The translations under genes and the position numbers were made by a program. Shown here one piece after another: positions 5,801 through 48,034 of a stretch of DNA of 64,000 nt (positions within the stretch are counted from its first letter, which is position 1; each line of letters begins with the position of its first letter). Location of the stretch: IMG/VR virus record IMGVR_UViG_3300042566_001512, positions 144,808-208,807 of that record. One strand, 5' to 3'. Under the pieces are notes generated by a model. The model was not told the origin of the DNA. It ran no database searches and worked only from the letters and a program-made list of their open reading frames with translations.

Positions 5801-6154
5801 TTTCAGGCGATAACGGACACGGATTCGCAGTCCACTATAGTGTTTCCTTCTAACTCCACCACAAGAGTAAACGACTTTAGGCTAAGGGGCGAACCCGGTA
5901 AAATTTTGTCACTACAATCCTCGGTATCTGGGCAGCGGGCTACGCTTACATACTCCGGGATATCGAGCGGCCCAATATTGACTAGCTACGCATCTATTAA
6001 AGACATCTCGGTTACTGGGGCGCAGTGGAATTCTCCAGTAAATTACGGATGTGTTGACGCGGGTAATAACGTAGGTTGGAACTTTGGCAACGTTTCTCTT
6101 AAAAGAGATTTCTCGCCGTTTATGGCAGTTCCTATACCTATTGGTGCAAATTAA
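2840..6154 (+). CDS. Gly/Ser/Thr-rich beta-strand-repeat adhesin/tail fibre, C-terminal part
   Basis: 1104 aa; second RYWVGGTGTW...DDVYFDNNS module; repeats continue from the upstream ORF; GGAG 8 nt before ATG. Confidence 0.7.
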   Translation: MKTVTITGVNTFKEISDTNWNSDTLTIVFPNATTNIEKWTVYGSAAYPVTLSRTGSSGSFTLNYTGTSNISSDYINVSNGAGLPSNTWYLGPNSVNGVNTSGFIFTYGAVRYWVGGTGTWDHQSATNWAYQSGGFAGAPAPTNLDDVYFDNNSSSGAFTVTLDSGFVGTGSISGTTLTITAVTKGTLAVGKNIYYNLSNVFAPDADLSNITIQSILTGTGGVGTYRISTSFSNVTSRAIYSDIPRCRDRASPTTNSLSFVGSSPIIISGSIEDSFSVNSAGYSSVIILNSGYNCRLGAAASLARYFLTGSNNRTLISSLSASMVFVYSGGFNTSNLSVTLSNFLSAGGSLTRNIDLTYSEIFLRDVYNYLNIVSSANLTFSSINSTIYLNFYSGHETAGFLTNNLQYGNIIFRPAPAGSSYAIVYFTGNLYCRNLNIESIQGSTNAQVNVCFNSGASSSLPVYVNVSEKFTLRGSSALARKTLVGSCGELSASFNKPSKIYITASQYDIDFVDFRDAEFTNTVISGQSIGNLGNNAGIQFTPPKTVYWKNTSTSYAVWKSASYALTEDGVGSFDNYPLAQDTVIFTDAGIGASASIGFLNPYDGLAGNIDMSRLTKPLTFNWTAFTGGGGYKGIYGDFILSNSVTINSNTPIAFYNRKNSIIDTKGKIANGYFFNSENCTLTIQSPLVTSGAVTLVRGNLSMLADITCDTFSSSAVFLRSVDFGSNFINVTGFNKDVVSSTSSGTGWSCSGTKMFVLQGSPTSGIRNVGGIASSNATQDQVYSFKVAGGSDTVRTINLSRFNSIIFEDEFTGSNGILWNYIFGDLRFSGNMTITPTPSGSAHDLYFVGSKQQNLTTNGVNVPRTCIIAKDTGSNVVLQDDVNFIQHLNNSQKVQLQSGTLNLNGRKLTTVSFSSETSSLKSVNFANGSLVVSGSSFSNTSTALTITGPGTISMTSNAAKTFAGGGYQSYPTLNQGGAGTLTITGANGFQAITDTDSQSTIVFPSNSTTRVNDFRLRGEPGKILSLQSSVSGQRATLTYSGISSGPILTSYASIKDISVTGAQWNSPVNYGCVDAGNNVGWNFGNVSLKRDFSPFMAVPIPIGAN

Positions 6155-10882: not shown

Positions 10883-11207
10883 TTTATTTTTAAAGCTATA
10901 AATATTTAGAATGACGGCATACGCCCCAGATATGTTCCTATGTACAGTAAAACAGAATAATAATATTTTACAATTCGTCAAAGACGAATACCTCGACGTA
11001 GTAAAACTATTCTGAATGTAAAGCTAATAGCAAAACATGATAAATATTGTTTGATTTATAAAAACGGTAAATACATGGCCTCTTGTGGTGGTCCTTGGAC
11101 CACCACAAGAGGCATTGAATCATTGGGGTGATAATCACCCTGTACAAGAAAAGTGCCGCATTGTTTAGGATGGCATTCCTAAACAATGTGCAATAATTAG
11201 AATATGT

Positions 11208-11240
11208 CATAATAGCCCTGGTATTACCAGGGCTATTATG
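11208..11240. terminator. intergenic palindrome
   Basis: CATAATAGCCCTGGTA-t-TACCAGGGCTATTATG. Confidence 0.55.
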
Positions 11241-11260
11241 ATTTAAATCCTATTATATTT

Positions 11261-11306
11261 TTTCAGTCACATATACCTGACTCACATAGAAACAATATTG
11301 TTTCTA
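11261..11306 (+). promoter_or_regulatory. degenerate copy of repeated putative early promoter + leader hairpin
   Basis: TTTCAGTCACATATAcCTgA...TAGAAACAATATTGTTTCTA aligns without gaps to the copies at 22921 and 51789. Confidence 0.65.
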
Positions 11307-11505
11307 ATCCCATTCGCTAATACGGCACGAAAGGATCCACCGTGCTCAATTTCCAAAACCCTGGCACAGAACATTGTAAAAGTTATAGAGGTCATCATTG
11401 TCGTCAAGATCATCGAGGTGATCAATCGGCAACAATGATTCACGATGACTGGTTAGTTAAATATTAGTCGAATTTAACTATACTGAACGTTAACGTAGAT
11501 GGTCT

Positions 11506-11598
11506 ATGCTGAATAAATTCAGCATTGTTCTTTTCATTATCATCTTAATTTCAGCACTGGTGTTTTATGTAAGTCTATTCTTTTACATATACTTATAA
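11506..11598 (+). CDS. 30-aa single-pass membrane micro-protein (not in ORF track)
   Basis: MLNKFSIVLFIIILISALVFYVSLFFYIYL; downstream of the promoter repeat; weak SD. Confidence 0.4.
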   Translation: MLNKFSIVLFIIILISALVFYVSLFFYIYL

Positions 11599-11902
11599 CG
11601 AAATACTAACTGTGACATCGTGTCTATACGACCCAATATGAATTTACTTCTCATCTCCATCGTAATCGTGTACCTGGTATAGGATCTCGGTACTTGTCTT
11701 ATGGCAAAAAACGAATACCGTGCCGGGCGGTACAATCTGGATTAATATATTTCATCCGTATTCTGGGCCAAAGTACCCGTCATTAACACACTAATGCCGG
11801 TCCTCGGAGCCACGATGTGCATGATCTATCGATTGTCTTTCGGTGTGGAAGAATAAGCGGAGCCGACGCTCTTGCCTAAATAGTAACATGATTGGATAAG
11901 AG

Positions 11903-11950
11903 CACACTCCGTGGATAATTCCACGGAGTGTGTGTCTTTTTCTTTTCTTT
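11903..11950 (+). terminator. intrinsic terminator
   Basis: CACACTCCGTGGA-taat-TCCACGGAGTGTG followed by T-rich tract. Confidence 0.7.
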
Positions 11951-12003
11951 TTCAAATACAAAACATAATTTCTTAATTTTGCACAGTTATGTGTTCTTAC
12001 GAT

Positions 12004-32961: not shown

Positions 32962-35900
32962 TTAAGCAGACTTTCGCATAGAAACAGGTGCAGACGGAGG
33001 TTCGTATTTACGACCATCGCTTTTGCTAGTGGGTACATTAGCTGTTTCTTTTGCGGCGCTTACAGTGTTTATCTTATCGTATATCAACTTCATTATGTCC
33101 AGAGTCTCCTTATGTACAATCAGGGATTGTGCCAGTAAAGATTCTGTATTGACCATAATGTCGGCAGTAAGGGTGTTTTTAGCCGCGTTATTATTTTCAG
33201 TAGAGGTACCTGCTACTCTAGGGTTTACTCCCACTGCGTCGTTAAGCGGGGAACTGCTTGCTTGCTTACTTGCCTGTACGGCCTTTTCCTGCTGTGCAAT
33301 AGGCCTGACTTTAGGGTTATATGAGGACTTCGGTCCTTCTATTTGAGAACTGGCCAGTTGTTCGGGCGGTAATCTTGGCGGCTGCTGCGCCGCAGCGGGC
33401 ATTACATAGTCGCCATTTATTTTTGGAGAAGAACTTACAGCGGACACTACTCTTACGAAGTCCTCTCGGGCTCCGCTAGACTTGTTGCTCCCAACTCCAG
33501 CGTAGTAGCTTCTTCCGGTTTTATAAGGTAGGCTGGCCCATTCTTTGCTGATATTGTCAGCAAATTGACCGGCGTCAATTTTTCCCTTTACGTAGTTATC
33601 AAGCCCTCTCATCTTTAATAACCCCACGGCCAACTTGTCCTGGGTCACGGGATTAAAAATGTCAGTTGCTTTTGCGTATCCGGCCTTAATTAGTCCGCTT
33701 AGAGTTTTTCTTATTATTTGATATTTTCCTACCGCAGTAGATTCGTGACCTCTAGCGATCATGTCTTTTTGGTAATCAGATACCTCTGCGATTGACATCT
33801 TTGTCAGGTTAGGTTCGGTTTTCCCGCCCACTAATATATTGTAATTTCCGTTACTTTCTTTTTGACCAATAAATTCCAATAAGGTATTTGTTGCGGGGTC
33901 AAAAGTCTTAACAGGTTCTCTCTTTATGTCGGCAGTCATAAGTCCTGAATCTTTTCTCGACTTCATCACTTGACTGGCTCCGTCGTCGTACTTGGGGTCT
34001 TTATCCTTAGATACGATCGAGGTACCTAGAGTGTTGTTTTGTGCATTGTTGTTTAGGGCCGGAGCGTTATTCGATGCCCTACTTTTATCCACTGCGACTT
34101 CTTTTGAAGTGGAAGCCGTGTCGCTCTTAAGTGGGGTAGAGTCGGCCGGTTTTGTCTTGGCCACATAATCGTGCTGTGTCTTTTCTTTGGCGCGCTCTGC
34201 AAGATACTCCAGGTTACCTTCTACACTAGAAGAATCGGTGTTTACCTGATACCCGGGCCACGGAGAATCAGTTACACTCCAAACTCCATTTATGGAAGAG
34301 ATTGTCTTAGCAACCTGAACAATTTTATTTGGACTTATAATTACAGGCGCTTCAGCTTTAGGCGGCTTTCCCGTTTCTGTTATATGCGCGGTTACGTAGT
34401 TGAGGTAAACTGGCAAGAATCTGTCTCTAAACCACTTACCCCAAGAAACTGCTGCCGGCCCAAATAAATCAGATATACCAAAGTAAACGTTCACCTTCTG
34501 AAGTAATTCGTTGAAATTATCATCAAAAGTAGCTTTGGTACCTTGTATCTTAATTAACTTACTAGTTTCGTTTTCTAGTTTATTTAGAGCTATTACCTTA
34601 GACAGCTCCAGTTCCTTAATACCGTATGTTTTATATCTGATTGCATCAAAAGCAGAAACGGTATTTTTTAATATAGTAGAACCCACAGTGGACGCACCGG
34701 TAACTGCGGTACCTGAGGGCTTTGCTTTTTCATCCGGTTTTCCAAGATCCACTCTAACGGCAGTGTTAGCGGCCTCTTGTGGAGGCTTTACGTCGGTGGG
34801 TAATCCAGTTGCCGTCTTTTTAGCATCGCCAGCTGGGGTAGCGAATTCTTTTAGTGCCGCCTCTATTGCTGCACTTACGTCCGCCGAATCTGAGGCCACG
34901 TACTTGCCTCCCAATATTGGAAGAGTCCCTGTTTTATAAGGACCGCTGGGGAATTTAGTAGCTTCTATGTATTTTAATTTAACGTCCTTCTTTAGGTCAT
35001 TTATTTTAGATAAGTCAATACTGCCATTTAAAATGGACAGCGCACTTACGTGAGTAAGGTAGACGGGTTTAAATCGTTTAATGTACCATGTGCCAAATTG
35101 TCTCTTGTGGTCATTATCCTTAGAAGAAAAACCGAATATTGACATCATCTCCTCAATGTCTATTTTCTTTTCTTCTAACTCCGCTTTTTCCGAACCCACT
35201 TTAACGAATTGTTTTAAATATTCTTCTAGATCTACTATTTTGCTAAAGTAGCTAGTTTCTTCTTTTTTAAAGCCGTATTGAACATAGCGTATGTTATCGA
35301 GCACTGTGGGCTTACTCATCCATCTGCGAACGGCTTTATAGCCCTTATAAGCACCGTAACCGACGGCAGCGGCACCCAGTATACCAAGGGTCACTGGAGA
35401 GCTTACAACGGCCGCTAGACCGGCTCCTAAGGCACCTAGTGCACCGGTAGCAGCCGCGCCCACGCCACCGGCGCCAGCTACCGCGGTAACGGCACTTCCG
35501 GCTAGACCGGCCACTCTTCCAATTCCTAAAAGTTTGCCTAGCCCGCTTAGTACTCCTCCGCCCTTCAATAGAGTTTTAAAGCCGCCCAAGAAACCGGTGA
35601 TGGCGTCAAGAGCACCGGACAATAGGCCGATCAATCCGCCCTTCTTGTCTTTTTCCTTACCAGGCTCAGCCGTTTTAGAGGACTGCTGCTTTGCTCTTTC
35701 TGCGTCTCTTCTGGCTTTTATATCTTCCCATGAACCTTCACGGTCACCGTCACCGTCTCGGTCGCCTTTTACTTTCTTTTCTGCGAAGAAGTCCGTAAAA
35801 GTATTTTTGATGTCACCCAGAAGGGAGACGGTCTGTTCGCCGGTGGTAGCTTCTTTATCTTTTTTATTTTTTATTGAGGAATTTGGCTTTATAGCTTCGC

Positions 35901-38900
35901 TTACGTTGAGCTTTACTCTTCTGCTAAACAACTTGTTTAATTTCTTAAACCCAGAAATTATTTTTGCAGAAGTAGAGGTCTTCAAAGGTTTTCCATTTTG
36001 ACCTAACAAACCTTCGTCTATGTCCTCGTTGCTCAAAACCATGGTTTCTTCTTTCTGGTCCCAAACAGGTCCGTCAATGTCGGAGACCAAAGAAATAATC
36101 TTTCCGGTTTTCTCAGATATGTATCTGCCGGCTTTCATGAGTGCCGCTCTTAGTCTAGGCTCAGGCTCACCCTTTACATATACGTCCTGTGGCTTACTGA
36201 GGTAGCGTATAAAACCACCTGCAACTTTAGCAGTGGCTCCGGCCAAACCCCTGGTTATTAACTTGGTTAACTTCAACCCCTTTTTCATTGTCCAGGCAGC
36301 TGCGGAGGTGAGTTTATTCATTATCCATTTTGCTGGTTTAAATGGATTAAATATGCCAAGCATAGAGTTATAAACACGCAAGTTTGGTAAGTCCTCGTCA
36401 AAGATTTTGACGTTACCTGCGGCGTCAACCACTTCGCCATTTATGTCGTTTTGATGATATATGGGCCTTCCGGTTGACCTGTTAAAGTACTCTCCGTTTC
36501 TTAGCCTGGTTGCGTATAGTCTAGGCTCCGGTTCGTCACCCGCGTATACGTCTTTTACGCTATATGGACCTGTCCCCATCGTAAGTTTTGCTAAATTTAT
36601 GCCAAATTTAGCGCCCTTTGCCAGCATTCTGAAGTTAAACTTTGTAAGCGGTATACCTATTTTGTTATAGTACCAAGAAACTCCGCCTATTACTTTTCCT
36701 GCTAGTTTTAATAATTTCCTAATAGGCGCAAATCGCTTTTGCCTGCTATCGTATACCACGAGGCTGTCTAGTTCTTCTACCGATACAACTGACCTGCCTT
36801 TTTCATCCTTTACCTCGCCTTGGATTTGTTCGGGTAAATAAATAGTCTTTCCAGAAATTGCGTCAGAGTAGTGGCCTTGTTGCATTTTAACTGCTGTCAT
36901 TCTGGGGTATTTTTCACCACCGACCCAAACGTCTTTGGCGCCGCCAAAAGCTACGCTTTTGAACATGTCGACAGTGTCCTTTACACCTGTCCAGGCCCTT
37001 TTTAAAATATCTACTGCTACAGATCCGGCCTTTGTGTTTTTTATATTTTTGGCTATTCCGTCAAATGTACCTTTTGCATAGTCGCCAAATCTTTTATACT
37101 GGCCGTCTTTATCTTTTACGTATGACTGATCAAGTTCATCGGATTTCAGTACGGTTTGTCCGCTTACGATGTCCTTAACGGTTCCGTTTATGTCAGACAA
37201 GGTTTTTACTATTTTTCCAGACGCCAGATCCACGTAGTGTCCCGCCTGTAGTTTAGCTTTTATGATTCTGGGGTTTTCTTCGCCCGAAACTCTCAAATCA
37301 ACCCATTTGTCTTTGAGAGTAAATGAGAGCTTTTGTATTTTGTCCTTTATCTCAGAATACGATTTACCAGAATAACCATCCTGGTTATTTCTTTCTTTAG
37401 AATCGTTTAGTTTGGTGGAAACTTTTCCTAGATAATTTTTAAATTTCCCGTATTGGCCGGATACTCTTTTACCTACATTGGCCTCGCTTATTTTTTGCTT
37501 TTGCTTCTTAAAGAAAAGTTTAGCTTTTGTAAACTGAGTCTTTCCTTTGTTTAATATATCTCCGGCGGGGCCGTTACTGTTTTCTTTGTTTACTTTATCT
37601 TTTTCTTCAAACTTACTGGCTTTGAACAAATCTGTAATTTCTTTGTAATAGCCTATAGAAGTGTCTAGTCTCTGTATAATTTGTTTAAAATAAACTTCAC
37701 AGTCTTGATCTTTCTTAGATAAAGGCGAGTAGTCGGATCTGGTAAATGAAGAAGTACCAACAGAAGAATAATCCGCAGAGGAAAAGGAGCCGACTCTACT
37801 GGAGACTTTGTCTGGCGCAACTGTGGGTTTAGAGATACCGGTTTTTTGCTTACGCACATTAGGCATCCGGCGCTTTTTGCCGATTTGGCCTTTGTAGAAG
37901 TCTTCCATGTCAAGATCATAACCTTCTTCTTTTCTGGTTATAATCCCAAGCTGAACCAGCTCGTTTTGTCTACCTTCCGATATAAGCTGCTCTATGGTAG
38001 CCCTAGGGTCGTTCATGCCTCTTACCAGGGAGTTCATCTGTCTATTGAGCAACAGCATTTCACTGGGCTTACTTTCCAAGTCGGACAAGTACTTACTTGT
38101 CAGTTCCTTTGGTCTTCCCTCCAAGCCCTTTTCCAGCTTAGATGACTGCATTTTATTTTTCAGGAAGGCCTGTTTTATGCTTATTCTTTCTTCCTCACTG
38201 AGTTTGTCCTCTGACTGAGAATCTATTTTATCTATAATTTTATCAAGGATGTCGTTTGTTCTTTTGGCATCATTGTCGTTGTATACTCTTGAGGCTATGC
38301 TCTTGAGTAATTTCGTTTTCCCAGTAAATCTGCCCTTGTCTTGATCGTACTCCACTCTGTCTATGTTTGGATTTCCCGTACGAATAATTTGAATTTCTTG
38401 CAAAATTCTAGACAAATATCCAGGTATAATTTCGTTGATGGATCTTTCGGTTTTCAGTGTAAACGGCTGTACAGCGCTTAAGTCTTTACCCGTGAGTCTA
38501 TTAAAACTACTGTCCACGTTTAGGGACGGCAAGATAGACTGCAGGCCGCGCATGATCCAGGCGCCTATGCCTTCTTTATTCGACCACGAATCGTCCTTCC
38601 TGAAATTTTCCGCGCTCCCTACTATATTTTCATTAAAGTTTTCTAGGTAATCCCCAACCTGCTCCACCTTAGGAAATACCTTTTTGATAGGTTCTTTAAA
38701 GCGCTTAGCAACACTGTAACCTACCGTGTTTGCCAAAAGGTCACCCGCGATCTCGCCACCTGTTTGATAAGTATCAAGCATGCCGGGCGCTACCTGTTCA
38801 CGAGCCATCTCAGCATCAGTAAGTCCAGATCTGAATCCCTGGGCATTTCTTTTTATAGTTTCTATAGTTCTATCTCGTATTTTACGAGTAGTCATTTGTA

Positions 38901-39828
38901 GATATTCGTCTGCGCTGGGCAATAGACCTCTAAAAGCAGTGCCGACAGTATCCGAGAATTTACCGAATAGTTTCTGACTGCTAAGTTCTTTTAGATTTAT
39001 TTTTTGCCAATCAGGAAGACCCGTGTTTTTAATTAACTTATTGTAAGCGTCTACGTGCAGTACGTGGGTTTTATTTACGGTCTCTAGTATGTCGTACTGA
39101 GCGAACAGCTGACGGTGCTGTAACTCAAGAGATTTTTTCTGATATTGTAGATTAATAGTGGTTTGATATTGTGATATCCTGGATAAGGACATCGCGGATT
39201 GATTTAACAGACTAAAGATGTCACGGTGTCTGTTTAGCTCAATACCTTCTTTTATTAGATCTTGACCTTCGTTCTCTATCTTATTATTTTCGGACTGTAC
39301 TATTTGTTCTTTGAATACTTCTGCAAGCTGTATGGATATTGCCGAGTCTCTTTGATCTCTGGCAGACAGGGCGGAACCTAGTTTTTGTTCATCCTTGGCT
39401 TCGTCCTCCCAGCGCTTAAAGATATCCTTTAATCTGCCGGGTATAAATTTACTATCCTTTGGTGCAAGCTTGGAAGCTACTCTTTTAAAGTCCTTTATGG
39501 CCGGCCGTACTTCTGCCGCTGCTTCACTATAGAGCTGCCTTAAATTCGTGGCAACCTTATCCCCCATGTCTAGTGTGTCGCCGTACCCTTTTGGCAGCAA
39601 TTCCCGCAATACACCAGTTATAAAAGAAGGATCGCTTACTTTGGCCTTTATCCCGCTTTTTAATCCGTCTTTAACTTTTGTGGCTGGTTTTCTATCGTCC
39701 TTAAAAGGATCAGCCTGAAAATCTATGTCGTCAAAAACGAGTTCATTATCAAAATCAAAACCGTTATCTAATGTGTTTGCTACTTTCTTACCCTTAGACA
39801 TGATTTTTATCTTTCTGTGAAAAAACAC
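32962..39828 (-). CDS. tape-measure protein / tail-associated lysozyme (phiKZ gp181-like)
   Basis: 2288 aa; Gly/Ala-rich membrane segment; C-terminal lysozyme-like KESNGNYN...AVGKYQII...QDKLA...EWASLP; divergent from vRNAP beta'. Confidence 0.88.
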   Translation of the reverse strand: MFFHRKIKIMSKGKKVANTLDNGFDFDNELVFDDIDFQADPFKDDRKPATKVKDGLKSGIKAKVSDPSFITGVLRELLPKGYGDTLDMGDKVATNLRQLYSEAAAEVRPAIKDFKRVASKLAPKDSKFIPGRLKDIFKRWEDEAKDEQKLGSALSARDQRDSAISIQLAEVFKEQIVQSENNKIENEGQDLIKEGIELNRHRDIFSLLNQSAMSLSRISQYQTTINLQYQKKSLELQHRQLFAQYDILETVNKTHVLHVDAYNKLIKNTGLPDWQKINLKELSSQKLFGKFSDTVGTAFRGLLPSADEYLQMTTRKIRDRTIETIKRNAQGFRSGLTDAEMAREQVAPGMLDTYQTGGEIAGDLLANTVGYSVAKRFKEPIKKVFPKVEQVGDYLENFNENIVGSAENFRKDDSWSNKEGIGAWIMRGLQSILPSLNVDSSFNRLTGKDLSAVQPFTLKTERSINEIIPGYLSRILQEIQIIRTGNPNIDRVEYDQDKGRFTGKTKLLKSIASRVYNDNDAKRTNDILDKIIDKIDSQSEDKLSEEERISIKQAFLKNKMQSSKLEKGLEGRPKELTSKYLSDLESKPSEMLLLNRQMNSLVRGMNDPRATIEQLISEGRQNELVQLGIITRKEEGYDLDMEDFYKGQIGKKRRMPNVRKQKTGISKPTVAPDKVSSRVGSFSSADYSSVGTSSFTRSDYSPLSKKDQDCEVYFKQIIQRLDTSIGYYKEITDLFKASKFEEKDKVNKENSNGPAGDILNKGKTQFTKAKLFFKKQKQKISEANVGKRVSGQYGKFKNYLGKVSTKLNDSKERNNQDGYSGKSYSEIKDKIQKLSFTLKDKWVDLRVSGEENPRIIKAKLQAGHYVDLASGKIVKTLSDINGTVKDIVSGQTVLKSDELDQSYVKDKDGQYKRFGDYAKGTFDGIAKNIKNTKAGSVAVDILKRAWTGVKDTVDMFKSVAFGGAKDVWVGGEKYPRMTAVKMQQGHYSDAISGKTIYLPEQIQGEVKDEKGRSVVSVEELDSLVVYDSRQKRFAPIRKLLKLAGKVIGGVSWYYNKIGIPLTKFNFRMLAKGAKFGINLAKLTMGTGPYSVKDVYAGDEPEPRLYATRLRNGEYFNRSTGRPIYHQNDINGEVVDAAGNVKIFDEDLPNLRVYNSMLGIFNPFKPAKWIMNKLTSAAAWTMKKGLKLTKLITRGLAGATAKVAGGFIRYLSKPQDVYVKGEPEPRLRAALMKAGRYISEKTGKIISLVSDIDGPVWDQKEETMVLSNEDIDEGLLGQNGKPLKTSTSAKIISGFKKLNKLFSRRVKLNVSEAIKPNSSIKNKKDKEATTGEQTVSLLGDIKNTFTDFFAEKKVKGDRDGDGDREGSWEDIKARRDAERAKQQSSKTAEPGKEKDKKGGLIGLLSGALDAITGFLGGFKTLLKGGGVLSGLGKLLGIGRVAGLAGSAVTAVAGAGGVGAAATGALGALGAGLAAVVSSPVTLGILGAAAVGYGAYKGYKAVRRWMSKPTVLDNIRYVQYGFKKEETSYFSKIVDLEEYLKQFVKVGSEKAELEEKKIDIEEMMSIFGFSSKDNDHKRQFGTWYIKRFKPVYLTHVSALSILNGSIDLSKINDLKKDVKLKYIEATKFPSGPYKTGTLPILGGKYVASDSADVSAAIEAALKEFATPAGDAKKTATGLPTDVKPPQEAANTAVRVDLGKPDEKAKPSGTAVTGASTVGSTILKNTVSAFDAIRYKTYGIKELELSKVIALNKLENETSKLIKIQGTKATFDDNFNELLQKVNVYFGISDLFGPAAVSWGKWFRDRFLPVYLNYVTAHITETGKPPKAEAPVIISPNKIVQVAKTISSINGVWSVTDSPWPGYQVNTDSSSVEGNLEYLAERAKEKTQHDYVAKTKPADSTPLKSDTASTSKEVAVDKSRASNNAPALNNNAQNNTLGTSIVSKDKDPKYDDGASQVMKSRKDSGLMTADIKREPVKTFDPATNTLLEFIGQKESNGNYNILVGGKTEPNLTKMSIAEVSDYQKDMIARGHESTAVGKYQIIRKTLSGLIKAGYAKATDIFNPVTQDKLAVGLLKMRGLDNYVKGKIDAGQFADNISKEWASLPYKTGRSYYAGVGSNKSSGAREDFVRVVSAVSSSPKINGDYVMPAAAQQPPRLPPEQLASSQIEGPKSSYNPKVRPIAQQEKAVQASKQASSSPLNDAVGVNPRVAGTSTENNNAAKNTLTADIMVNTESLLAQSLIVHKETLDIMKLIYDKINTVSAAKETANVPTSKSDGRKYEPPSAPVSMRKSA

Positions 39829-39906: not shown

Positions 39907-42334
39907 ATGGATAAACTGGACGTGCCTTTTAACATATTTTTTCTTAGACTAGACGAGCTTACCGTTAAGTACCTCAAGCCCGTGACTTCCCTTGACGTCT
40001 TTGATGGCCTTACTAAAAACCTCCATCCGGATGGATTATATTCGCCATCCATATTCGGCGTGGTTGGAAGTAATAATAGATACACAAAATTCTCCTATAT
40101 AGACATAAAGGTAAAAATAATGCACCCGGTGTATTATAAAGCAATTACCTCTATGAAATCATTATACGAATCCATAATGACCTCAAAAGAGTTTGCGGTC
40201 TGGGACCAGGAAAAAAAGGACTTTGTAAAGTCAAACGCGTTGGCAGGGCAAACCGGTTACGACTTCTTTATACAGCACTGTGATAGCATAGTGCACGAAG
40301 AAAGACCGTCTACCGATAGACAGGAAAACATATCACTTATAAATAAATATAAACAAAATTATTTATACGATAAAATCATCGTACTTCCGGCGGCATATAG
40401 GGACATTGAAATAGATGACAATGGAAGAGAATCCTCAGATGAGATAAATTCGCTTTATTACAAAATCATAGCGATATCAAACACAATAAACATTAACACC
40501 GTAAGAATCTCACCTGAAGCTTACAACACCCAGAGAATGTCCCTGCAAAGAGCATTCAACGACACATACGAGTATCTCTCTAACCTAATTAGAGGAAAGA
40601 GTAATCTCTTTATGGGCAAGTGGGCGTCTCGAAAAATATTTAACGGGACTAGAAACGTAATTACCTCAATGAACGTTACTCAAACTGAGCTAGGAGCACC
40701 CAATTCAATAAACTACAACGACACGCTTGTTGGGCTGTACCAAACTTTAAAAGGCATTTTGCCAGTAACGTTATACAGATTAAAAACTGGGTTTTTATCT
40801 GGAGTATTTCCATCAATAAGCTCACCTGCTCTATTGACTAATAAGACAACGTTAAAATCAGAAAAAGTTGTTTTAAAGACTGCCATATATGACAAGTGGA
40901 TGACCAATGAAGGATTGGAGTCACTTATTAGCTCTTATAAAGAACCATCAATCAGACACGACTATGTCACAGTGGACAACTATTATCTAGGTTTAATTTA
41001 TAGGGGGCCGGATAATACTTTTAAATTGATACACGGAATAGACGAACTTCCTGAGGACAGAGATCCAAAAGACTGCAGGCCTATCAGCTTGACGGAGTTA
41101 TTTTATTGTTCAATCTACGAAATTACGGACAATTACCCAGCACTAGTAACGCGGTATCCAGTAACCGGAGTCGGTAGCATATACCCGTCTATGGCTAAAT
41201 TAAAATCAACGATAGAAGTGGAAAAGAGATATAAGCTAGGGGTAGACTGGACTGTAGATCCACAATCTAAAGTGGCCTACGAATTCCCAACTCAAACTGA
41301 TTTATTCAGTGCTCTGTCTCCCCATCCTTTTAAACTAGGTAGACTTTCAGCTGATGGTTTTAAATGTAAGACTATATAAAACGGTTTTACATTTTAATCA
41401 CGTCCTGTTTTGCAGAAATGCGAAATAAGATTCTTCCTTAATTGCTGGGACATCTTGACACGTTAAAAGCTACAACGTAATGCGAAAGCATAGGCGCGAA
41501 TGCTTGAAAATTTTAACGTAAGACAATCAGCAGCGAAGCTCCTGCTCCCCGCCTAAACGGGAAAGGAGAACGTTCAACGGCCAGCCCTTAAGCAAGGGGT
41601 AGGAGCAAGTGCTCCGAAATGGGAAGCGCCTTACCAGCAATTGCTAGGAAGGTGAAGATATGGTCTTACCTGCATGGAGACATGCAGCGGCTTCTAATGG
41701 AAAGCCGGTAAGCGAGGTAACGTGCGCTTATTGAAAACACGTGTTCGACGGCGATTAAAAGTTATATTAACCCTCAATACCCTCGGGTTAAAACGAGTTA
41801 ATTTATAACACAAAAAGGTTGCCTATTCGCAGTAATGTGAATATAAAAAAATCTCTCTAATTGCTGGGACTCCTCGTTAAACCACTAAGACTACAACGCA
41901 GCGCGAAAGCGCAGACGTGAGAGTTTGAAAACATTAGTGGGTAGAGACAATCAGCAGCTAAGACCCTTACTGCATATAAATTGCAAATGGGTAAAGTTCA
42001 ACGACTAGATCGAAAGATCGTACCGTGTCAAGTGACGCGGGAAACGGGAGACTCCGGTTTTTACCGGATGAAGATATAGTCTTGTCTATGCGGAGACGCG
42101 TAGCTGTGGGATAGCATTTACTTCCCTTTAAAACGAAACAGGTTAACGCCCCTGTTTGAAAACCTAACGACAAGTAGTTGTAACTTCCTCTACTCCGAAG
42201 ATTCTATTAAAGAAATTTATGATTTTTTTAATAACACTCGGTGCTACGTAGGAACTGATGGAAAATTTATTAATAGTTTAGAAATAGATACGGTTAAATA
42301 CGTTTTACATAACCTCACAGGAGAACCACAATAA
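39907..42334 (+). CDS. virion RNA polymerase beta' catalytic subunit (phiKZ gp180-like), spliced: exons 39907-41355, 41744-41755, 42170-42334 (541 aa)
   Basis: HPDGLYSPSIFG, GKWASRKIFNGTRNVI, LVTRYP; splicing restores RLSAD|FDGD|TSSCN containing the DxDGD Mg-binding motif; stop overlaps the beta ATG. Confidence 0.93.
41356..41743 (+). ncRNA. group I intron 1 (388 nt, no ORF)
   Basis: P AATTGCTGGGA 41440, Q AATCAGCAGC 41525, R GTTCAACGGCCA 41572, S AAGATATGGTC 41655; 5' exon ends in U, intron ends in G. Confidence 0.92.
41744..41755 (+). other. 12-nt micro-exon encoding FDGD
   Basis: TTC GAC GGC GAT between two group I cores. Confidence 0.9.
41756..42169 (+). ncRNA. group I intron 2 (414 nt, no ORF)
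   Basis: P AATTGCTGGGA 41859, Q AATCAGCAGC 41949, R GTTCAACGACTA 41996, S AAGATATAGTC 42071; ends ...CCTAACG. Confidence 0.92.
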
Positions 42335-45300
42335 TGAATAATCAACAAGTTTTTTATAAAACATACGGAGTTAGAAACGTAAATGAACTCGCTTCTCCTA
42401 GACTTTTTGATCTAGTAGAATTTGTGTTTCCTTTTAACAGCATAATGCACTATGCGACTTATGACTCCATTGAGAACGGCCCGCCTGGTGACTATCCGCT
42501 GTTTAACCAAATAAAGAAACCGATATACTTTAAGACAATAAACGAAATATCTGCTTTTAATGGCAGCCCAAGGCTGCAGGCCATAAACACGCAGGAACTA
42601 GTTAGGGATTACAGAAATAACAATAGGCGAATGAAGTTACTGCAGGGAGAGGTTCAAAACGTATCGGACCCTACTGTATTAACCGTATTTAATTACTGCA
42701 TATTAAATAAACAATACAAATATGCCCGCAACTTATTTACGGACTATCATCGCTGGAAGAATATATTTACAACAGTTATAGACACTTTAGTAAATAGACT
42801 TTCTAGCCCACAAATAAACCACTATATACCGCTGACTATACCGGATATAATACCTAGCATGATTCAGTTAGATTTGGCCTCCAAAGGGCTTAATCAGTCG
42901 AACCTAAAAGTATTCAAAGACAATAATAGTTTTATGCTTTTAGAGTTATGGAAGTGGCTCAATCCTGCGACTAGTTCTGATAGTCTTTTTAGCAAAATAC
43001 CTATTAACAGAATTCATCTAGTTAATCTGGTTTATATTAAAAGAAACAAGTGGTGCGTTTTAAATTTAGGCGTAATAAATAGCTTTAAGGAAGTCAGTGG
43101 GGACGCCCTTAAACCAGAAAACACACCAATTGTGCTATCTAGGGTGAAGCTCAAATACGTTCAGATACAAAAACGTATACTGAACATGATGATGACCATA
43201 GAGGCCGGATCAGTTGTGGCCGTGGATATTCCCGAGGACATTAAACTGGACGTTCCCGATCAAACGGTAGAAGAACCCGATATCTATTCAGATTACCAAG
43301 AACAAGAGGTAACCACAGAGGCCCCTGTTAAACAAAAGCCTCCTCTTACTGATAAAGAATTACTGGTTCTTCAAGAAAAAGCTAATCAGTTATTATCCGT
43401 AGAAGATGATGACGATCAAGAAATAATAGATCAAAAGATCAAGTTACAAGATCTAGAACTAGACCAAAGACTAGATCAACTTAATGAAATTAACCAAAGA
43501 AAAGAAAATGAATTACAGACAATAGAAAACTCTACTATTTACGACGTTCTTAATGAACAAGAGCCGTCCCTTTATAAATTAGTAGAAAACATGTGCGACA
43601 GGTTAGCAGATAACAACATGCTAACTGCAGCGGAATATAAAAGACTAATTAGGTTGGCCGGTTCCTATAAGACGATAACTTCAAAGGACGGTAAAAGTAC
43701 TCTAGAAGAATACGTCAAAATACCACCAGAAGATCTGGTGGTGCAGGACGTAGTTAACATACCGGATTCTCCGGCAATTGTTGATAAAACGATGCTAAAA
43801 TCTTCTTTGCAGTCATTTACTTCCGACTATGTAAAAAAGGACATAATCGGAAAAGACACTGCATCGATGGTGATCGCGATTCAAAAATCTGGAATGATAG
43901 TCACAGATTACAAGGTGGAAAAATACGAAAGTATTTTAGGTGCGGAAGAAGAGCATACGTTGAGGATTGTACCTGTAGAAGGAATCCCATCGACCATCAG
44001 ATTTAAAGTTCCAGTAGTAAACGAAGACGGTACCTTTGTGGCGTCCGGCGTCAAATATAGACTAAGAAACCAAATAGGGGATTAAGATTTATAAAATATC
44101 GCAGAACATACTTTTGCGATAGTGACAAACAATGTGTTGTCTAAAAGGTCCCCGTGCTGCAGAAACGCCGCACAAGTAAACCTACCTAATTGCGGGAAAA
44201 CGCCATATCTAAATAGCTACCACTTATACCCAGAAACGGAGTATAAATACCTGCGGGGTAATGTTCCAGACAGGCAAGGTAAAAACGCTATTAAGAGGCA
44301 TAACCGACGCAGCAAAGCCCCTAAATGCCAAAAGCGGCACATTGGGGTGGGCTCAGAGGCCATCGAAAGCTATTGCGCCAGCGCATAATAACATTCGTGT
44401 AAAGTCGAATGGTCACTATTAGCATTAGTGATTAAAGCAAGTAGAGTAGGGGCGTTTATTCGCTCCGAAACGGTAGGCACCTAACGGCACTAAACGGCTC
44501 AAGGTGAAGATATGGTCCACATGGATGAGTGCTACCCATCCGCAAAATTGATTACAATAGAGTAAGCCTAACAAGCTACTATGGAAAAACTTTTATAAAC
44601 AGATCTCGAAAGCGAGCAAACGATTACGGCACCTGGATTCAAAACGCGGTGATGGCCAAAGCGCTTAATAAGGAAGACAAAGACATTACCGATTTGTTCA
44701 CGGCAAACGTATTCGATAACACGTTAAAAGCACCAAGAGCTTACACTGGTTTATCCATGTATTTTAAATCTTTTAAGGTAAAAGATTACGTACTGATGCT
44801 AGATCACAAGGTCATAAAGAGCACAGTAAACGATAAAATACTAAAGAAGTACGAAACCGACTCAAGTGTGGTGTGCGGTTATAAAAACTCTGATTTGTTA
44901 GTAATGGATAAAAACAACGCCATTTACAAAATCAAAGATGATCAATTGGAGTTCATATCCAGCATAGAGGATTTCCTTAACATAGACAGCAGCGCTGCTC
45001 CAGTGGAGTATGCCGAAGTAGTCATAGGCGCTAAAGATATACCCGTTGGCGTCGTTCTCAGCTATTACATAGGTTTTACAAAGCTACTTAAGCTTCTTAA
45101 TTTAAACCCAGTCAGAGTAGAGGCTGGAAAACGAGTGAATCTACAACCCAATGAGTTTTCTTTGGTGTTTAGTGACGAGACTCTCGTATTCTCCAGAGAC
45201 GATAGATTATCCTCTTTAATAGTGGGTGGATTCTTGGAGTATCACAAATCCATTAGAGCGTTCAACGTCCACAGCTTTGATAAAAAGGGCGTGTACGTTA

Positions 45301-48034
45301 ATTTGCTGGAGTCTAATAAACTAGGAACCAGATATATACGTGAGATGGATCTAATGCAGCAAATGTTCATAGATCCAATAACTAAAGAGATATTAAAAGA
45401 CATGAAGGAACCAACAACGTTCAACGGTCTTTTAGTTAGAGCATGCGAGCTATTGATGGATGATAAACACCCTCAAGAGTTAGATACGAAGTACATGCGA
45501 ATAAAGGGATACGAAAGAATACCTGGGGCCGTTTATAGGCAACTAGTTGCAGCTATACGCCAGCACAATGCGCAGTTAGGCAAGGCATCCAAGCAAATGA
45601 CACTCGATCCTTACGCAATATGGCGCTACATTACAGAGGATCCGACTAAGGTTCAGATAAGTGAGATTAATCCTATTCAGGCACTTAAAGAAACCGAAGC
45701 CGTAACTTTTTCAGGAACGGGCGGCCGTAGTAGCCGAAGCATGGTAAAAAGCACAAGAGCTTACCACAAAAACTCTATGGGCACTATTAGCGAGTCCACC
45801 GTTGACTCCTCTGATGTAGGTATAAATATCTACACTAGCGCCAATCCGCAATTTAATTCTTTGCGAGGAATATCCAGAGAATTTGATTTTGAGAAACAAG
45901 GTGCCACTAGCTTGCTATCCACCTCCGCAATGCTGGCACCGGCATCCGACAAAGATGATTAATAGTTTATTACAAAAATAAACTAATGGTCCGACAGATC
46001 AGCGATGATCAGTTTGTAATCTCCTTAATTGCTGGGACTCCCTTATAGCCGTTTTACTACAATGATCACGAAAGTGAGTCATGACAGTTAGAAAACAAAA
46101 CGGATTGGGTAATCAGCAGCGAAGCCTCTTTAAAATGAGGAACGTTCAACGACTAAGATCTTATCAATCTGTACCTGCAAAGTGTGGGGAAACGGGAGAC
46201 TGCTCCATCAGGAGCAGAAGATATAGTCTCTTCTGCATTGAGAGATGCAGCTGCGCAAACGCGCGAGTTAGATTAACGAACTAACTGAAGGTAAAGCCAA
46301 AACGAGTAAACTTAAAATGCTCCCTTTGAGAGTAATCTCAATTGAAAAACTTCTCTAATTGACAAGAAGTCCCTTATAGACAATTGACTACAGCGTGACC
46401 GGAAACGGTGAGCGTGAGAGTTTAGGACGATTGTATTGGGTAACTTGCAGCGAAGCTCCTATAAAAACGGAGAACGTTCATCGACTAGACCGTAAGGTCG
46501 TACACTCAAGTGAGTGGAAACGGGAAGCTCCTTTAGAAAAACTAAAGGATGGTGACATAGTCAGTTCTGTAGTGAAAGTTACAGCGGGTCATGTTTGGCC
46601 GGCATCGACGAAAAACTAGTCGATGTGAACATAAAGAAATTTTGTAGCCATACAACAAGGTCACTCCATAGCTTGCGACGGGTACCATCAGCCAACGGTG
46701 AGAACCGGCTACGATCAAGTGGTGGCTCATCGCTCCCATGATCTATTCGCAATAACCGCCACAAAACCAGGAACGGTATTGTCCATCAACAAAAAGGGCA
46801 TAGTGGTAGAATATGCAGATAAAACAAAACAAGGATACGAGCTAGGAAGGCGATTTGGTAATGCGGCAGGTTTGGTAATACCGCACGAAATAGTAACCGA
46901 TCTTAAAGCAGGTCAAGAGTTTGAAATCGGTGAGGCCATTTGCTATAACTCCGGGTTCTTTGAGCCGGATTTCTTTGATCCTAAGAGAATAGTTTTAAAG
47001 AATTCATTCAACGTAAGAACGGTTCTTTGGGAATCGCTGCAGACCTTAGAAGACGCTTCTTCTATTACAGAAAAGACTGCTAATAAACTAGTCACCTCTG
47101 TGACTAAAGTAAAGAACGTTTTGGTTTCGTTCGATCAGACTGTCAGTAATTTAGTAAAGATAGGAGAGAAGGTGGACTACGACACCGTCCTTTGTTATAT
47201 TCAGGACAGTATTACTGCTGGAAATAAACTTTTCACAGACGAAACCATAGACACATTAAAAATGCTAGGTGCCCAATCCCCCAGGGCGCACGTGCAAGGC
47301 GTTGTAGAGGCCATTGAGGTTTACTATCACGGAGAGAAAGAGGACATGTCCGAGTCTCTGCTGGAGCTATGCAACGAAAGCGATAAACGTCTGAAATATG
47401 TGGCAAATAGTCAAGGCAAAAAATTCATGTCGGGAAGCGTGGACTCCGGCTTCCGGATTGAAGCCAATCCTCTTGCTCTAGACTGCGTCGCTATAAGAAT
47501 CTACATTACTACGAAAGCACCCGCTGGAATTGGCGATTAGTTTTTAGTCCTGCTACGATGAAAATCGTAAACAGTTTTCTCCTTAATTGCTGGAAACTCT
47601 TTTATAAAAAAAGACAATCAGCAGCGAAGCCTCATTCCCAAAAAAATGAGGAACGTTCAACGACTATCCCGTAGCTGGGAGTAGGGTCATGTGGCCCCAA
47701 ACAGGAGATATCTTCGGGTCTTAACTGGCCAAAGATAAAGATATAGTCTAGTCTATGCGGTGACGCGTAGCTGCGAAATATAAAAAGTCGCAGGATTGGG
47801 TCTAACGAACCCAATCTAATAAAAACGAAAGGCGTGTTTGCTAACCAGATGAAGACAGTTTTTAGTGAAACTATAAAGCAGAGTTACAAAACTGAAGACG
47901 GAAAAGAAATAGACGCGGTTTTTGGTGCAAAGAGTATCGACGACCGTATCGTTAACTCCGCAGTTATAATTGGCACGGCCAATGCCACTCTTGACATTAT
48001 TACTGATAAAGCAGTAGAGATGTATTTTTCTTAA
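42334..48034 (+). CDS. virion RNA polymerase beta subunit (phiKZ gp178-like), spliced: exons 42334-44082, 44532-45959, 46297-46307, 46637-47537, 47828-48034 (1431 aa)
   Basis: Splicing restores IGD|LPIRKI, KDD|PKRV|NFVAIQQGHS and GIGD|KGVFANQMK; exon sum 4296 nt = 1432 codons; AGGAG SD. Confidence 0.92.
44083..44531 (+). ncRNA. group I intron 3 (449 nt, divergent core)
   Basis: P AATTGCGGGAAA 44188, Q-like AACCGACGCAGC 44302, R GCTCAGAGGCCA 44351, S AAGATATGGTC 44507; P3 CCTACC/GGTAGG. Confidence 0.85.
45960..46296 (+). ncRNA. group I intron 4 (337 nt, no ORF)
   Basis: P 46027, Q AATCAGCAGC 46111, R GTTCAACGACTA 46144, S AAGATATAGTC 46218; ends ...GTAAAG. Confidence 0.92.
46297..46307 (+). 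other. 11-nt micro-exon (CCA AAA CGA GT, PKRV)
   Basis: Needed to rebuild DDPKRVNF in frame; ends in U and is preceded by G. Confidence 0.85.
46308..46636 (+). ncRNA. group I intron 5 (329 nt, no ORF)
   Basis: P AATTGACAAGAA 46357 covaries with Q AACTTGCAGC 46442; R GTTCATCGACTA 46476; S GTGACATAGTC 46552; ends ...ATAAAG. Confidence 0.88.
47538..47827 (+). ncRNA. group I intron 6 (290 nt, no ORF)
   Basis: P AATTGCTGGAAA 47585, Q 47616, R GTTCAACGACTA 47655, S AAGATATAGTC 47738; splits GD|K. Confidence 0.92.

What the first reader, a model, noticed from the sequence alone, without database searches (positions are those of the whole stretch)
41356..42169. RNA polymerase active site assembled from a 12-nt micro-exon (SAD|FDGD|T)
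Seen: exon 1 ends ...TCA GCT GAT, then a 388-nt intron, then TTC GAC GGC GAT (41744-41755), then a 414-nt intron, then ACA AGT AGT TGT AAC. Two of the three catalytic aspartates of the DFDGD Mg-binding motif are therefore encoded by a 12-nt exon between two ribozymes. Inference: this exon must serve as the 3' exon (P10) of intron 1 and the 5' exon (P1) of intron 2, which implies ordered splicing. Skipping it is in frame and would give a full-length but catalytically dead subunit, a possible regulatory switch.
Basis: partly seen in the sequence, partly recalled or inferred. Interest (0 to 1): 0.9.

Follow-up and report, generated by a model that had tools for sequence, protein, structure and literature searches.

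The report
Phage RNA polymerase micro-exon between introns

Summary
Exon 1 (39907-41355) ends ...LSAD. Then come a 388-nt group I intron, the 12-nt exon TTCGACGGCGAT (FDGD, 41744-41755), a 414-nt group I intron, and exon 3 (TSSCNF..., 42170-42334). Rfam scores both introns well above threshold. Every junction has U before the 5' splice site and G at the intron end. A family profile leaves exactly four positions unmatched between the two long exons, and intron-less homologs read ...GADFDGDT... without a break.

The same layout occurs in two other uncultured phages (87% and 54% protein identity). There the micro-exon differs only at synonymous positions, and one of those changes is compensated in intron 2's guide sequence.

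The gene is the phiKZ gp180 homolog. The 15 nt encoding DFDGD are an intron hotspot with at least five insertion points. Single introns sit there in phiKZ and other cultured phages, and four metagenomic contigs (three distinct sequences) carry a 6-nt micro-exon (TTCGAT).

I read this as two independent mobile-intron lineages occupying neighbouring homing sites. Intron 2 is a copy of an HNH-endonuclease intron that has lost its endonuclease gene. Ordered splicing is not implied by the sequence, and nothing supports an exon-skipping switch. It is a new variant of known things. No splicing was observed; that remains inferred.

The parts
39907..41355 (+). Exon 1 of the vRNAP beta-prime N-terminal subunit gene (phiKZ gp180 homolog), 483 codons, ending ...GRLSAD with the first catalytic Asp (GAT)
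   Evidence: PHROG 2986 'RNA polymerase beta subunit', E=3.5e-171, profile positions 2-484. tblastn finds 314 phage records, best 46% identity. Gene order matches phiKZ gp181/gp180/gp178.
41356..41743 (+). Intron 1: group I intron, 388 nt, no ORF, at site 1 (D|FDGD). Proposed guide sequence GUCC at 41402-41405, pairing with the exon's GAU (U.G at the splice site). Ends in G.
   Evidence: Rfam RF00028, 83.6 bits, 41383-41687. Ortholog in L095 at 70% identity. 33 of 97 predicted pairs are kept through changes on both sides. phiKZ, LucasX and about 13 metagenomic loci have an intron at the same site. The GUC(C) guide before P2 is shared with relatives.
41744..41755 (+). Micro-exon, 12 nt, TTCGACGGCGAT = F-D-G-D, carrying the second and third Mg-binding Asp of DFDGD. 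Bases 7-12 (GGCGAT) form P1 of intron 2.
   Evidence: Sequence read directly. It fills the 4-position gap in the PHROG profile. L095 (TTCGATGGCGAT) and L011 (TTCGACGGAGAT) differ from it only at synonymous positions, while the flanking intron sequence diverges.
41756..42169 (+). Intron 2: group I intron, 414 nt, no ORF, at site 3 (DFDGD|T). Guide sequence GGUUGCC at 41817-41823, directly before P2. Ends in G.
   Evidence: Rfam RF00028, 88.8 bits, 41790-42103. P1 has 6-7 bp. Orthologs L095_I2 (75%) and L097_I3 (66%) carry an HNH_3+NUMOD1 ORF in the P1 loop. 25 of 72 predicted pairs are kept through changes on both sides.
42170..42334 (+). Exon 3: 54 codons (TSSCNFLYSEDSIKE...NLTGEPQ) plus stop. 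The stop overlaps the ATG of the beta gene.
   Evidence: PHROG 2986 positions 489-538, E=6.8e-8. Aligns with the C-terminal ends of FLC9, L006, L095 and L097.
42334..48034 (+). Context: the adjacent vRNAP beta gene (phiKZ gp178 homolog), split by four more group I introns (44083-44531, 45960-46296, 46308-46636, 47538-47827). A probable 11-nt micro-exon lies at 46297-46307.
   Evidence: Rfam hits. PHROG 3148 matches the exons. tblastn with FLC9 gp40 plus junction reading. P1 helices for each intron.

Best explanation
Two independent mobile group I introns of one broad family sit at neighbouring homing sites inside the 15 nt that encode the catalytic DFDGD loop of the virion RNA polymerase beta-prime subunit. 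One follows the first Asp codon and the other follows the third, so a 12-nt exon is left between them as a by-product.

The primary transcript must be spliced twice by the ordinary group I pathway to give an mRNA that encodes ...LSADFDGDTSS... In that pathway guanosine attacks at a U.G pair in P1, and exon ligation follows after the terminal G.

Intron 2 recognises its 5' splice site through a 6-7 bp P1 formed entirely with the micro-exon. Intron 1 recognises little more than the Asp codon GAU through a short GUC(C) guide plus an extended P1 stem. Neither needs the other to be removed first.

Intron 2 descends from an intron that carried an HNH homing endonuclease and has lost that gene. The hotspot exists because this DNA is the most conserved stretch of the gene, which makes it the preferred target of homing endonucleases. 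An occupied site is also expected to be immune to the matching endonuclease of a co-infecting phage.

Shown here: anatomy, family membership, conservation and covariation. Inferred: actual splicing, independence of the two splicing events, and the immunity benefit.
For: - **Ribozymes:** both are full-length Rfam group I matches. Helices are kept through compensatory changes among orthologs.
- **Junctions:** in-silico splicing reproduces the sequence of intron-less homologs, with a profile gap of exactly 4 residues.
- **Recurrence:** L095 (87% identity) and L011 (54%) have the same layout. The micro-exon shows only synonymous differences, and the exon change C to A at -4 is matched by G to U in the guide sequence (GGCGAU/GUUGCC versus GGAGAU/GUCUCC).
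- **Variable occupancy in near relatives:** L096 and L097 (about 78%) have only the site-3 intron. L006 and L012-L013 (54-57%) have none. 63 of 82 IMG/VR loci are uninterrupted at the motif.
- **Single introns at each site in cultured phages:** site 1 in phiKZ (gp179 HNH), LucasX and Yong MS31; site 2 in phiKp_32 and GXNNA8 (HNH); site 3 in VP4B and FishSpeaker (HNH).
- **Separate lineages:** the window's two introns are 55% identical to each other, while each has a closer ortholog at the same site in L095 (70% and 75%).
- **Endonuclease loss:** the HNH_3+NUMOD1 ORF lies in the P1 loop of L095 and L097 and is absent from the window.
- **Literature:** in the adjacent beta gene of PhiPA3, an intron-borne HNH endonuclease acts as a weapon against co-infecting phiKZ (PMC11620839).
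Against: - No RNA data exist for this uncultured phage, so splicing is inferred only.
- For the homologous phiKZ gp179 intron, ONT-cappable-seq found no evidence of splicing under the conditions tested (PMC10914365).
- Intron 1's exon-pairing part of P1 is only 3-4 bp, and the unconstrained minimum-energy fold prefers a U-A rather than U.G register.
- I could not define P10 or P9.0 for either intron.
- Two ~400-nt ribozymes 12 nt apart could interfere sterically, so a kinetic order cannot be excluded.
- The covariation counts rest on only 3-4 sequences.
Confidence: 0.8

Rival explanations
1. Regulatory switch. Splicing is ordered or conditional, and skipping the micro-exon yields a full-length but catalytically dead beta-prime that modulates virion RNAP activity or assembly.
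For: - Skipping is in frame, since 12 nt is four codons and exon 1 ends on a codon boundary.
- The two introns share a similar 3'-terminal motif (UUGAAAAC...CG), and intron 1's short GUC guide would fit either GAU. Cross-use of splice sites is therefore chemically conceivable.
- The layout is kept in three lineages.
Against: - Close relatives lack one or both introns, so the layout is dispensable.
- The introns behave as mobile elements, with HNH genes in their orthologs.
- P1 of intron 2 and the 3' splice site of intron 1 do not overlap.
- No conserved element beyond the ribozymes was found.
- A dominant-negative subunit packaged into virions would be costly to the phage.
Confidence: 0.06
2. 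Adaptive double immunity. Co-occupation is maintained by selection because each intron breaks up the recognition site of a different homing endonuclease carried by competing phages, so the layout is a defence rather than mere parasitism.
For: - HNH endonuclease-bearing introns exist for sites 1, 2 and 3.
- PhiPA3 gp210 cuts the intron-less allele of a competitor and lowers its fitness (PMC11620839).
- The window keeps both introns although both have lost their endonuclease genes.
Against: - No endonuclease cleavage sites were mapped here.
- ORF-less introns persist anyway, because precise deletion from an active-site codon run is rare.
- This rival differs from the main explanation only in asserting selection.
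Confidence: 0.3
3. Decayed locus. The gene is a pseudogene, or the two introns are removed as one composite unit, so no DFDGD-containing product is made from this locus.
For: - Gene callers see only a 490-aa ORF that ends shortly after ...SAD.
- Splicing of the phiKZ counterpart has not been seen.
Against: - All three exons are intact and in frame, and they match the family profile end to end.
- The micro-exon shows only synonymous change across three lineages.
- The ribozyme helices covary.
- No other D[FY]DGD-encoding gene lies in the window. The one other DYDGD match (minus strand, about 11667) lies in no real ORF.
- The subunit belongs to the conserved virion RNAP of this phage group, according to the annotations of its homologs.
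Confidence: 0.03

Closest known systems
phiKZ gp180 / gp179 / gp178 locus (group I intron with an HNH endonuclease, predicted by Mesyanzhinov et al. 2002, as cited in PMC10914365)
   Same: Same gene, same gene order, and the same insertion point as intron 1. phiKZ gp180 ends ...LGAD*, and its next exon starts FDGDTVSF after a 1443-nt intron.
   Different: phiKZ has one intron, and it carries an endonuclease gene. The window has an ORF-less intron there, plus a second intron 12 nt downstream.
PhiPA3 gp210 intron in the vRNAP beta gene (Birkholz et al. 2024, PMC11620839)
   Same: A group I intron with an HNH endonuclease, placed at conserved Asp codons of a phiKZ-like virion RNAP gene. The window's beta gene has an intron at what appears to be the same ...DKDD| position.
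   Different: It lies in the beta gene, not beta-prime, as a single intron with no micro-exon. Its endonuclease was shown experimentally to act in phage competition. Nothing comparable was tested here.
Mitochondrial mini-exons and tandem ('side-by-side') group I introns in fungi and placozoans
   Same: Very short exons (3 nt and even 1 nt are reported) flanked by self-splicing organellar introns, and two group I introns lying side by side in one gene (PMC8971849, PMC5436844, PMC8393795).
   Different: Those cases are in organelle respiratory genes (cox1, cox3). This one is in a bacteriophage gene, and the micro-exon encodes catalytic metal ligands of an RNA polymerase. My library searches found no phage example.
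Multi-intron phage genes (for example Staphylococcus phage Twort nrdE with two group I introns; Landthaler et al. 2002, listed in PMC12908238)
   Same: [quoted passage not shown]
   Different: As far as I recall, the exons between those introns are of ordinary length. I did not verify this here. The spacing in the window is 12 nt.

Membership tests
Group I self-splicing intron (Rfam RF00028) | Covariance-model match above the curated gathering score over the full model | tested here: met
   Intron 1 scores 83.6 bits and intron 2 scores 88.8 bits against a gathering score of 50, both over model positions 1-253.
Group I self-splicing intron (Rfam RF00028) | U as the last exon base, paired (U.G) with an internal guide sequence in P1 | tested here: met
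   Both 5' exons end in U. Intron 2 pairs GGCGAU with GGUUGCC (6-7 bp), with a compensatory change in L011. Intron 1 pairs only GAU(G) with (C)GUC, 3-4 bp, supported by the same GUC(C) guide in related introns. The minimum-energy fold prefers another register.
Group I self-splicing intron (Rfam RF00028) | Terminal G at the 3' end of the intron | tested here: met
   G at 41743 and G at 42169. The same holds at all junctions in L007-L011, L095 and L097.
Group I self-splicing intron (Rfam RF00028) | Helices maintained by compensatory substitutions | tested here: met
   25 of 72 predicted pairs (intron 2 set, 4 sequences) and 33 of 97 (intron 1 set, 3 sequences) are kept through changes on both sides. 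The samples are small.
Group I self-splicing intron (Rfam RF00028) | Guanosine-dependent self-splicing observed | not testable with these tools
   No RNA or biochemical data exist for this metagenomic phage.
phiKZ-type virion RNAP beta-prime N-terminal subunit (gp180 family, PHROG 2986) | Full-length sequence homology to the family | tested here: met
   Exon 1 E=3.5e-171, exon 3 E=6.8e-8, together covering profile positions 2-538 of 539 apart from the 4-position gap. 37% identical to phiKZ gp180.
phiKZ-type virion RNAP beta-prime N-terminal subunit (gp180 family, PHROG 2986) | Catalytic D[FY]DGD metal-binding motif | tested here: met
   Present only in the in-silico doubly spliced product: D from exon 1 and FDGD from the micro-exon. 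Intron-less homologs carry it without a break.
phiKZ-type virion RNAP beta-prime N-terminal subunit (gp180 family, PHROG 2986) | Conserved neighbourhood (gp181-like giant protein on the opposite strand, gp178-like beta gene downstream) | tested here: met
   A 2288-aa ORF on the minus strand lies upstream, and the PHROG 3148 beta gene lies downstream.
phiKZ-type virion RNAP beta-prime N-terminal subunit (gp180 family, PHROG 2986) | Packaged in the virion | not testable with these tools
   Inferred from the phiKZ annotation ('structural head protein').
Mobile intron with homing endonuclease | Intron-encoded endonuclease ORF | tested here: not met
   Neither window intron holds an ORF on the coding strand. 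The orthologous site-3 introns in L095 and L097 carry a 443-448-aa HNH_3+NUMOD1 ORF. The window's copies are therefore endonuclease-less derivatives.
Twintron (intron within an intron) or 'zombie' composite intron | One intron nested in another, or two modules spliced as a single unit with no coding exon between them | tested here: not met
   The two introns lie side by side. The 12 nt between them are coding, conserved, and required for DFDGD.

The most novel reading that the evidence does not exclude
This intron family is guided mainly by the Asp codon GAU through a conserved GUC(C) internal guide. That would let it hop at the RNA level (by reverse splicing) between neighbouring GAU codons of catalytic acidic motifs. 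It would explain three observations: the five insertion points within 15 nt, the 12-nt and 6-nt micro-exons, and the fact that five of the six introns in this window follow GAT.

A more radical version is that cross-use of the look-alike splice sites produces an FDGD-less poison subunit under some conditions.
Probability: 0.15. Interest if true: 0.8.

Novelty: new variant of a known kind. Interest (0 to 1): 0.55.

Why it matters
- **Annotation:** gene callers and most GenBank records annotate this subunit as truncated or as separate small ORFs. Examples are phiKZ gp180 ending ...GAD*, and VP4B gp015 and gp016. Recognising micro-exons of 6-12 nt is needed to annotate the essential RNA polymerase of phiKZ-like phages correctly.
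- **A natural test system:** it offers a minimal case for asking how two ~400-nt ribozymes fold and splice when only 12 or 6 nucleotides apart. It also lets one ask whether splice-site choice stays faithful when both introns recognise the same GAU.
- **Evolution:** the codons for the RNAP metal-binding loop appear to be a contested landing pad for several intron and endonuclease lineages. This extends the 'intron as weapon' picture from the PhiPA3/phiKZ beta gene to the beta-prime active site.
- **Possible link to the phage nucleus:** six introns in two adjacent genes is an unusually high density for a phage. It may relate to the separation of transcription from translation in nucleus-forming phages. 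This last point is my inference and was not tested.

Tried and rejected
1. **Pfam on all exon pieces:** no family found. PHROGs did recognise them.
2. **DNA-level search of GenBank phages:** only the intron cores match, so the phage has no close cultured relative.
3. **P10 for intron 1:** scanning the bases 5' of the guide against the micro-exon gave 0-2 bp in the window and its relatives. I do not claim a P10.
4. **Second intron as a recent within-genome duplicate of the first:** a first tree paired L011's two introns (support 0.947). With closer relatives added, that pairing dissolved and the window's introns fell into separate site-specific lineages at 55% mutual identity. I reject this for the window. 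It remains open for L007-L009 and L011. What does hold is that introns do not form one clade per site across all phages. The site-2 introns of L007-L009 group with a site-1 intron (L063, support 0.961), and the site-2 and site-3 introns of cultured phages group together (support 0.884).
5. **A second DFDGD gene in the window:** the only other D[FY]DGD match (minus strand, about 11667) lies in no ORF over 60 aa and is within chance expectation.
6. **A cultured phage with the double-intron layout:** not found among the 60 of 314 records sampled. The other 254 were not inspected.
7. **Two loci left unresolved:** in L077 the gene breaks after DFD, but no downstream exon lies within 4 kb. The 255-nt insert after GGT in Aeromonas phage ZPAH34 has no Rfam match, and L106 breaks at the same point.
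Full report
**1.

Reading the window and translating the pieces gives this layout:

| Part | Coordinates | Content |
|---|---|---|
| Exon 1 | 39907-41355 | ends ...GRLSAD (GCT GAT) |
| Intron 1 | 41356-41743 | 388 nt, last base G |
| Micro-exon | 41744-41755 | TTCGACGGCGAT = FDGD |
| Intron 2 | 41756-42169 | 414 nt, last base G |
| Exon 3 | 42170-42334 | TSSCNFLYSEDSIKE...NLTGEPQ, then stop |

Rfam's group I intron model (RF00028) matches both intervening sequences over its whole length, at 83.6 and 88.8 bits against a gathering score of 50. Both 5' exons end in U and both introns end in G, as group I chemistry requires. At each junction the exon-side and intron-side bases differ, so the boundaries cannot slide.

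**2. It is more than chance**

- PHROG 2986 ('RNA polymerase beta subunit') aligns exon 1 to profile positions 2-484 and exon 3 to 489-538. Exactly four positions are left for the micro-exon.
- Intron-less homologs read straight through. Burkholderia phage FLC9 has ...KLGKLGADFDGDTASANVTYSDESIKE.... 63 of 82 related IMG/VR loci have D[FYH]DGD uninterrupted.
- Pfam did not recognise these divergent subunits.

**3. What the gene is**

tblastn finds 314 phage records, all jumbo phages, with best identity about 46%. Gene order matches phiKZ: a giant ORF on the opposite strand (the gp181 position), then this gene (gp180), then the beta gene (gp178). phiKZ gp180 is annotated as a virion protein. The window is part of IMG/VR contig UViG_3300042566_001512, 208,807 bp. 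No cultured phage matches at the DNA level except in the intron cores.

**4. The site of intron 1 is already known territory**

phiKZ gp180 as annotated ends ...LGAD*. Then comes a 1443-nt group I intron carrying gp179 (an HNH endonuclease), and the next exon begins FDGDTVSF. Xanthomonas phage LucasX, Vibrio phage Yong MS31 and about 13 metagenomic loci are interrupted at the same point. The phiKZ intron was predicted in 2002, but a full-length transcriptome study saw no evidence of its splicing (PMC10914365). This is a caveat for every inference made here.

**5. The DFDGD codons are a hotspot with at least five insertion points**

| Insertion point | Where seen |
|---|---|
| After Asp-1 (site 1) | phiKZ, LucasX, Yong MS31, window, many metagenomic loci |
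| Inside the Phe codon (TT\|T) | L028, L104 |
| After Asp-2 (site 2) | Klebsiella phage phiKp_32; Pseudomonas phage GXNNA8 (with HNH gene) |
| After the Gly codon (GGT\|) | Aeromonas phage ZPAH34, L106 (no Rfam hit for ZPAH34) |
| After Asp-3 (site 3) | Vibrio phage VP4B; Shewanella phage FishSpeaker (with HNH gene); window |

The window combines sites 1 and 3.

**6. The micro-exon layout recurs**

- L095 (a metagenome contig, 87% protein identity) has a 381-nt intron 1, the micro-exon TTCGATGGCGAT, and an 1841-nt intron 2, followed by TSSCNFLYSEDAIKE.
- L011 (54% identity) has a 635-nt intron 1, the micro-exon TTCGACGGAGAT, and a 360-nt intron 2.
- The three micro-exons differ only at synonymous third positions, while the intron sequences that abut them are quite different. 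The 12 nt are therefore an island under coding constraint.
- L007, L008 and L009 (L010 is identical to L009) carry introns at sites 1 and 2. This leaves a micro-exon of only 6 nt, TTCGAT = FD, followed by GGTGAY ACN = GDT.
- Altogether I found six distinct double-intron sequences among roughly 100 loci examined.

**7. How the exon is recognised**

- *Intron 2.* The last six bases of the micro-exon, GGCGAU, pair with GGUUGCC at 41817-41823. That guide lies immediately 5' of the P2 hairpin. In L011 the exon is GGAGAU and the guide is CGUCUCC, so the C-G pair has become A-U. In L095 and L097 the same guide (GGUUGCC, AGUUGCC) follows the endonuclease ORF, which places that ORF in the P1 loop.
- *Intron 1 and its relatives.* They share a GUC(C) guide after an extended P1 stem. 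It pairs with little more than GAU.
- *The beta-gene introns.* They use the same device: GGGGAU/GUCCCC, GAU/GUC and GAU/GUC. Five of the window's six introns follow a GAT codon.
- *P10.* I found no credible P10 between intron 1 and the micro-exon (0-2 bp).

**8. The ribozymes look functional**

Alignments of orthologous introns keep their helices through compensatory changes. For intron 2 this is 25 of 72 predicted pairs (window, L095, L097, L011). For intron 1 it is 33 of 97 (window, L095, L011). The samples are small, but the signal fits selection on structure.

**9. Where the two introns came from**

- The site-3 introns of the window, L095 and L097 are orthologs (66-75% identity), with L011's as their sister.
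- The site-1 introns of the window and L095 are orthologs (70%).
- The two window introns are only 55% identical to each other.
- L096 and L097 have only the site-3 intron, with DHDGD uninterrupted. The closest intron-less relatives are 54-57% identical.
- The L095 and L097 ORF is an HNH_3+NUMOD1 protein, and the window's intron 2 lacks it. The simplest history is therefore: a site-3 endonuclease intron came first, a site-1 intron was added in the lineage of the window and L095, and the endonuclease gene was then lost in the window.
- Across all phages, introns do not form one clade per site, so site shifts have happened. L007-L009's site-2 introns group with a site-1 intron (support 0.961). 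The site-2 and site-3 introns of cultured phages group together, and so do their endonucleases (FishSpeaker versus GXNNA8, 35% over 393 aa).
- An early hint that L011's two introns are duplicates of each other did not survive the larger tree.

**10.

- 'Active site assembled from a micro-exon' is supported in silico.
- 'Serves as P1 of intron 2' is supported, with covariation.
- 'Implies ordered splicing' does not follow. The two recognition elements do not overlap, and whichever intron leaves first, the other still has an ordinary 5' or 3' exon. Steric interference remains possible, particularly in the 6-nt variant, and needs an experiment.
- 'Regulatory switch by exon skipping' is arithmetically possible, but no evidence supports it. 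The patchy presence of the introns in close relatives argues against it.
- The stated refutation (an intact copy elsewhere, or a pseudogene) is not met within the window. The only other DYDGD string lies in no ORF. The rest of the contig was not available to me.

**11. Comparison with the literature**

- Introns with HNH endonucleases at conserved residues of phiKZ-like RNAP genes are known. One, PhiPA3 gp210 in the beta gene, gives a competitive advantage (PMC11620839, PMC12908238). The window's beta gene has an intron right after ...SDKDD, which appears to be that same site.
- Mini-exons of 3 nt and even 1 nt, and side-by-side group I introns, are documented in mitochondria (PMC8971849, PMC5436844, PMC8393795).
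- Three full-text searches found no report of such a micro-exon in a phage or in an RNA polymerase active site. The absence of a hit in that library is not proof of novelty.

**12. Verdict**

This is a real, well-defined feature and a new variant of known kinds. The mechanism is ordinary group I splicing performed twice. The interest lies in three things: the extreme proximity of the two introns, the catalytic content of the exon, and the recurrence of 12-nt and 6-nt versions at a multi-site hotspot.

Noticed in passing
window 42334-48034: The adjacent vRNAP beta gene (gp178 homolog) is split by four more group I introns: 44083-44531 (Rfam 47.2 bits, just under threshold), 45960-46296, 46308-46636 and 47538-47827. 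That makes six introns in about 8 kb.
   Followed up: partly
window 46297-46307: A probable second micro-exon, 11 nt (CCAAAACGAGT, giving P-K-R-V together with the next exon's first base), between introns b2 and b3. It lies right after ...SDKDD, the PhiPA3 gp210 intron site. Intron b3's guide GCUC pairs with its GAGU. A 17-nt alternative starting at 46291 is not excluded.
   Followed up: partly
window 41355, 41755, 44082, 45959, 47537: Five of the six introns follow a GAT (Asp) codon. Four of them have a GUC(C) guide directly before P2, which suggests the family is tuned to GAU.
   Followed up: partly
L007:5958-5963; L008 and L009 (micro-exon just before position 5860): A 6-nt micro-exon, TTCGAT (FD), between two group I introns in the same gene in three distinct metagenomic phages. 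This is the tightest arrangement seen.
   Followed up: partly
L095:5491-6837; L097:1200-2531: A 443-448-aa HNH_3+NUMOD1 endonuclease ORF lies in the P1 loop of the site-3 intron, between the 5' splice site and the guide sequence. The window's intron 2 keeps a 55-nt loop there instead.
   Followed up: yes
L092 (Aeromonas phage ZPAH34) about 4457-4711; L106 from about 2027: Short inserts after GGT (DFDG|D), 255 nt in ZPAH34, with U before and G at the end. ZPAH34's insert has no Rfam group I match; L106 was not searched. These may be a different or very reduced intron type.
   Followed up: no
L077:5425-9425: The gene breaks after DFD (GAC TTT GAT | TAATG...), but no downstream exon or Rfam intron was found within 4 kb. 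The gene may be split or the intron unusually large.
   Followed up: no
L004 (phiKZ AF399011), L088 (VP4B), L003 (LucasX): GenBank records annotate the interrupted gene as a truncated ORF plus a separate small ORF, or leave the last exon unannotated. The DFDGD-containing product is therefore missing from the protein databases.
   Followed up: partly
window 10883-12003: About 1.1 kb without any ORF over 60 aa on either strand, between an 827-aa and a 208-aa ORF. No Rfam hit at gathering threshold.
   Followed up: no
window 32962-39828 (minus strand): A 2288-aa ORF in the position of phiKZ gp181 (tail-associated endolysin). The assignment is by gene order only and was not tested by homology here.
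   Followed up: no
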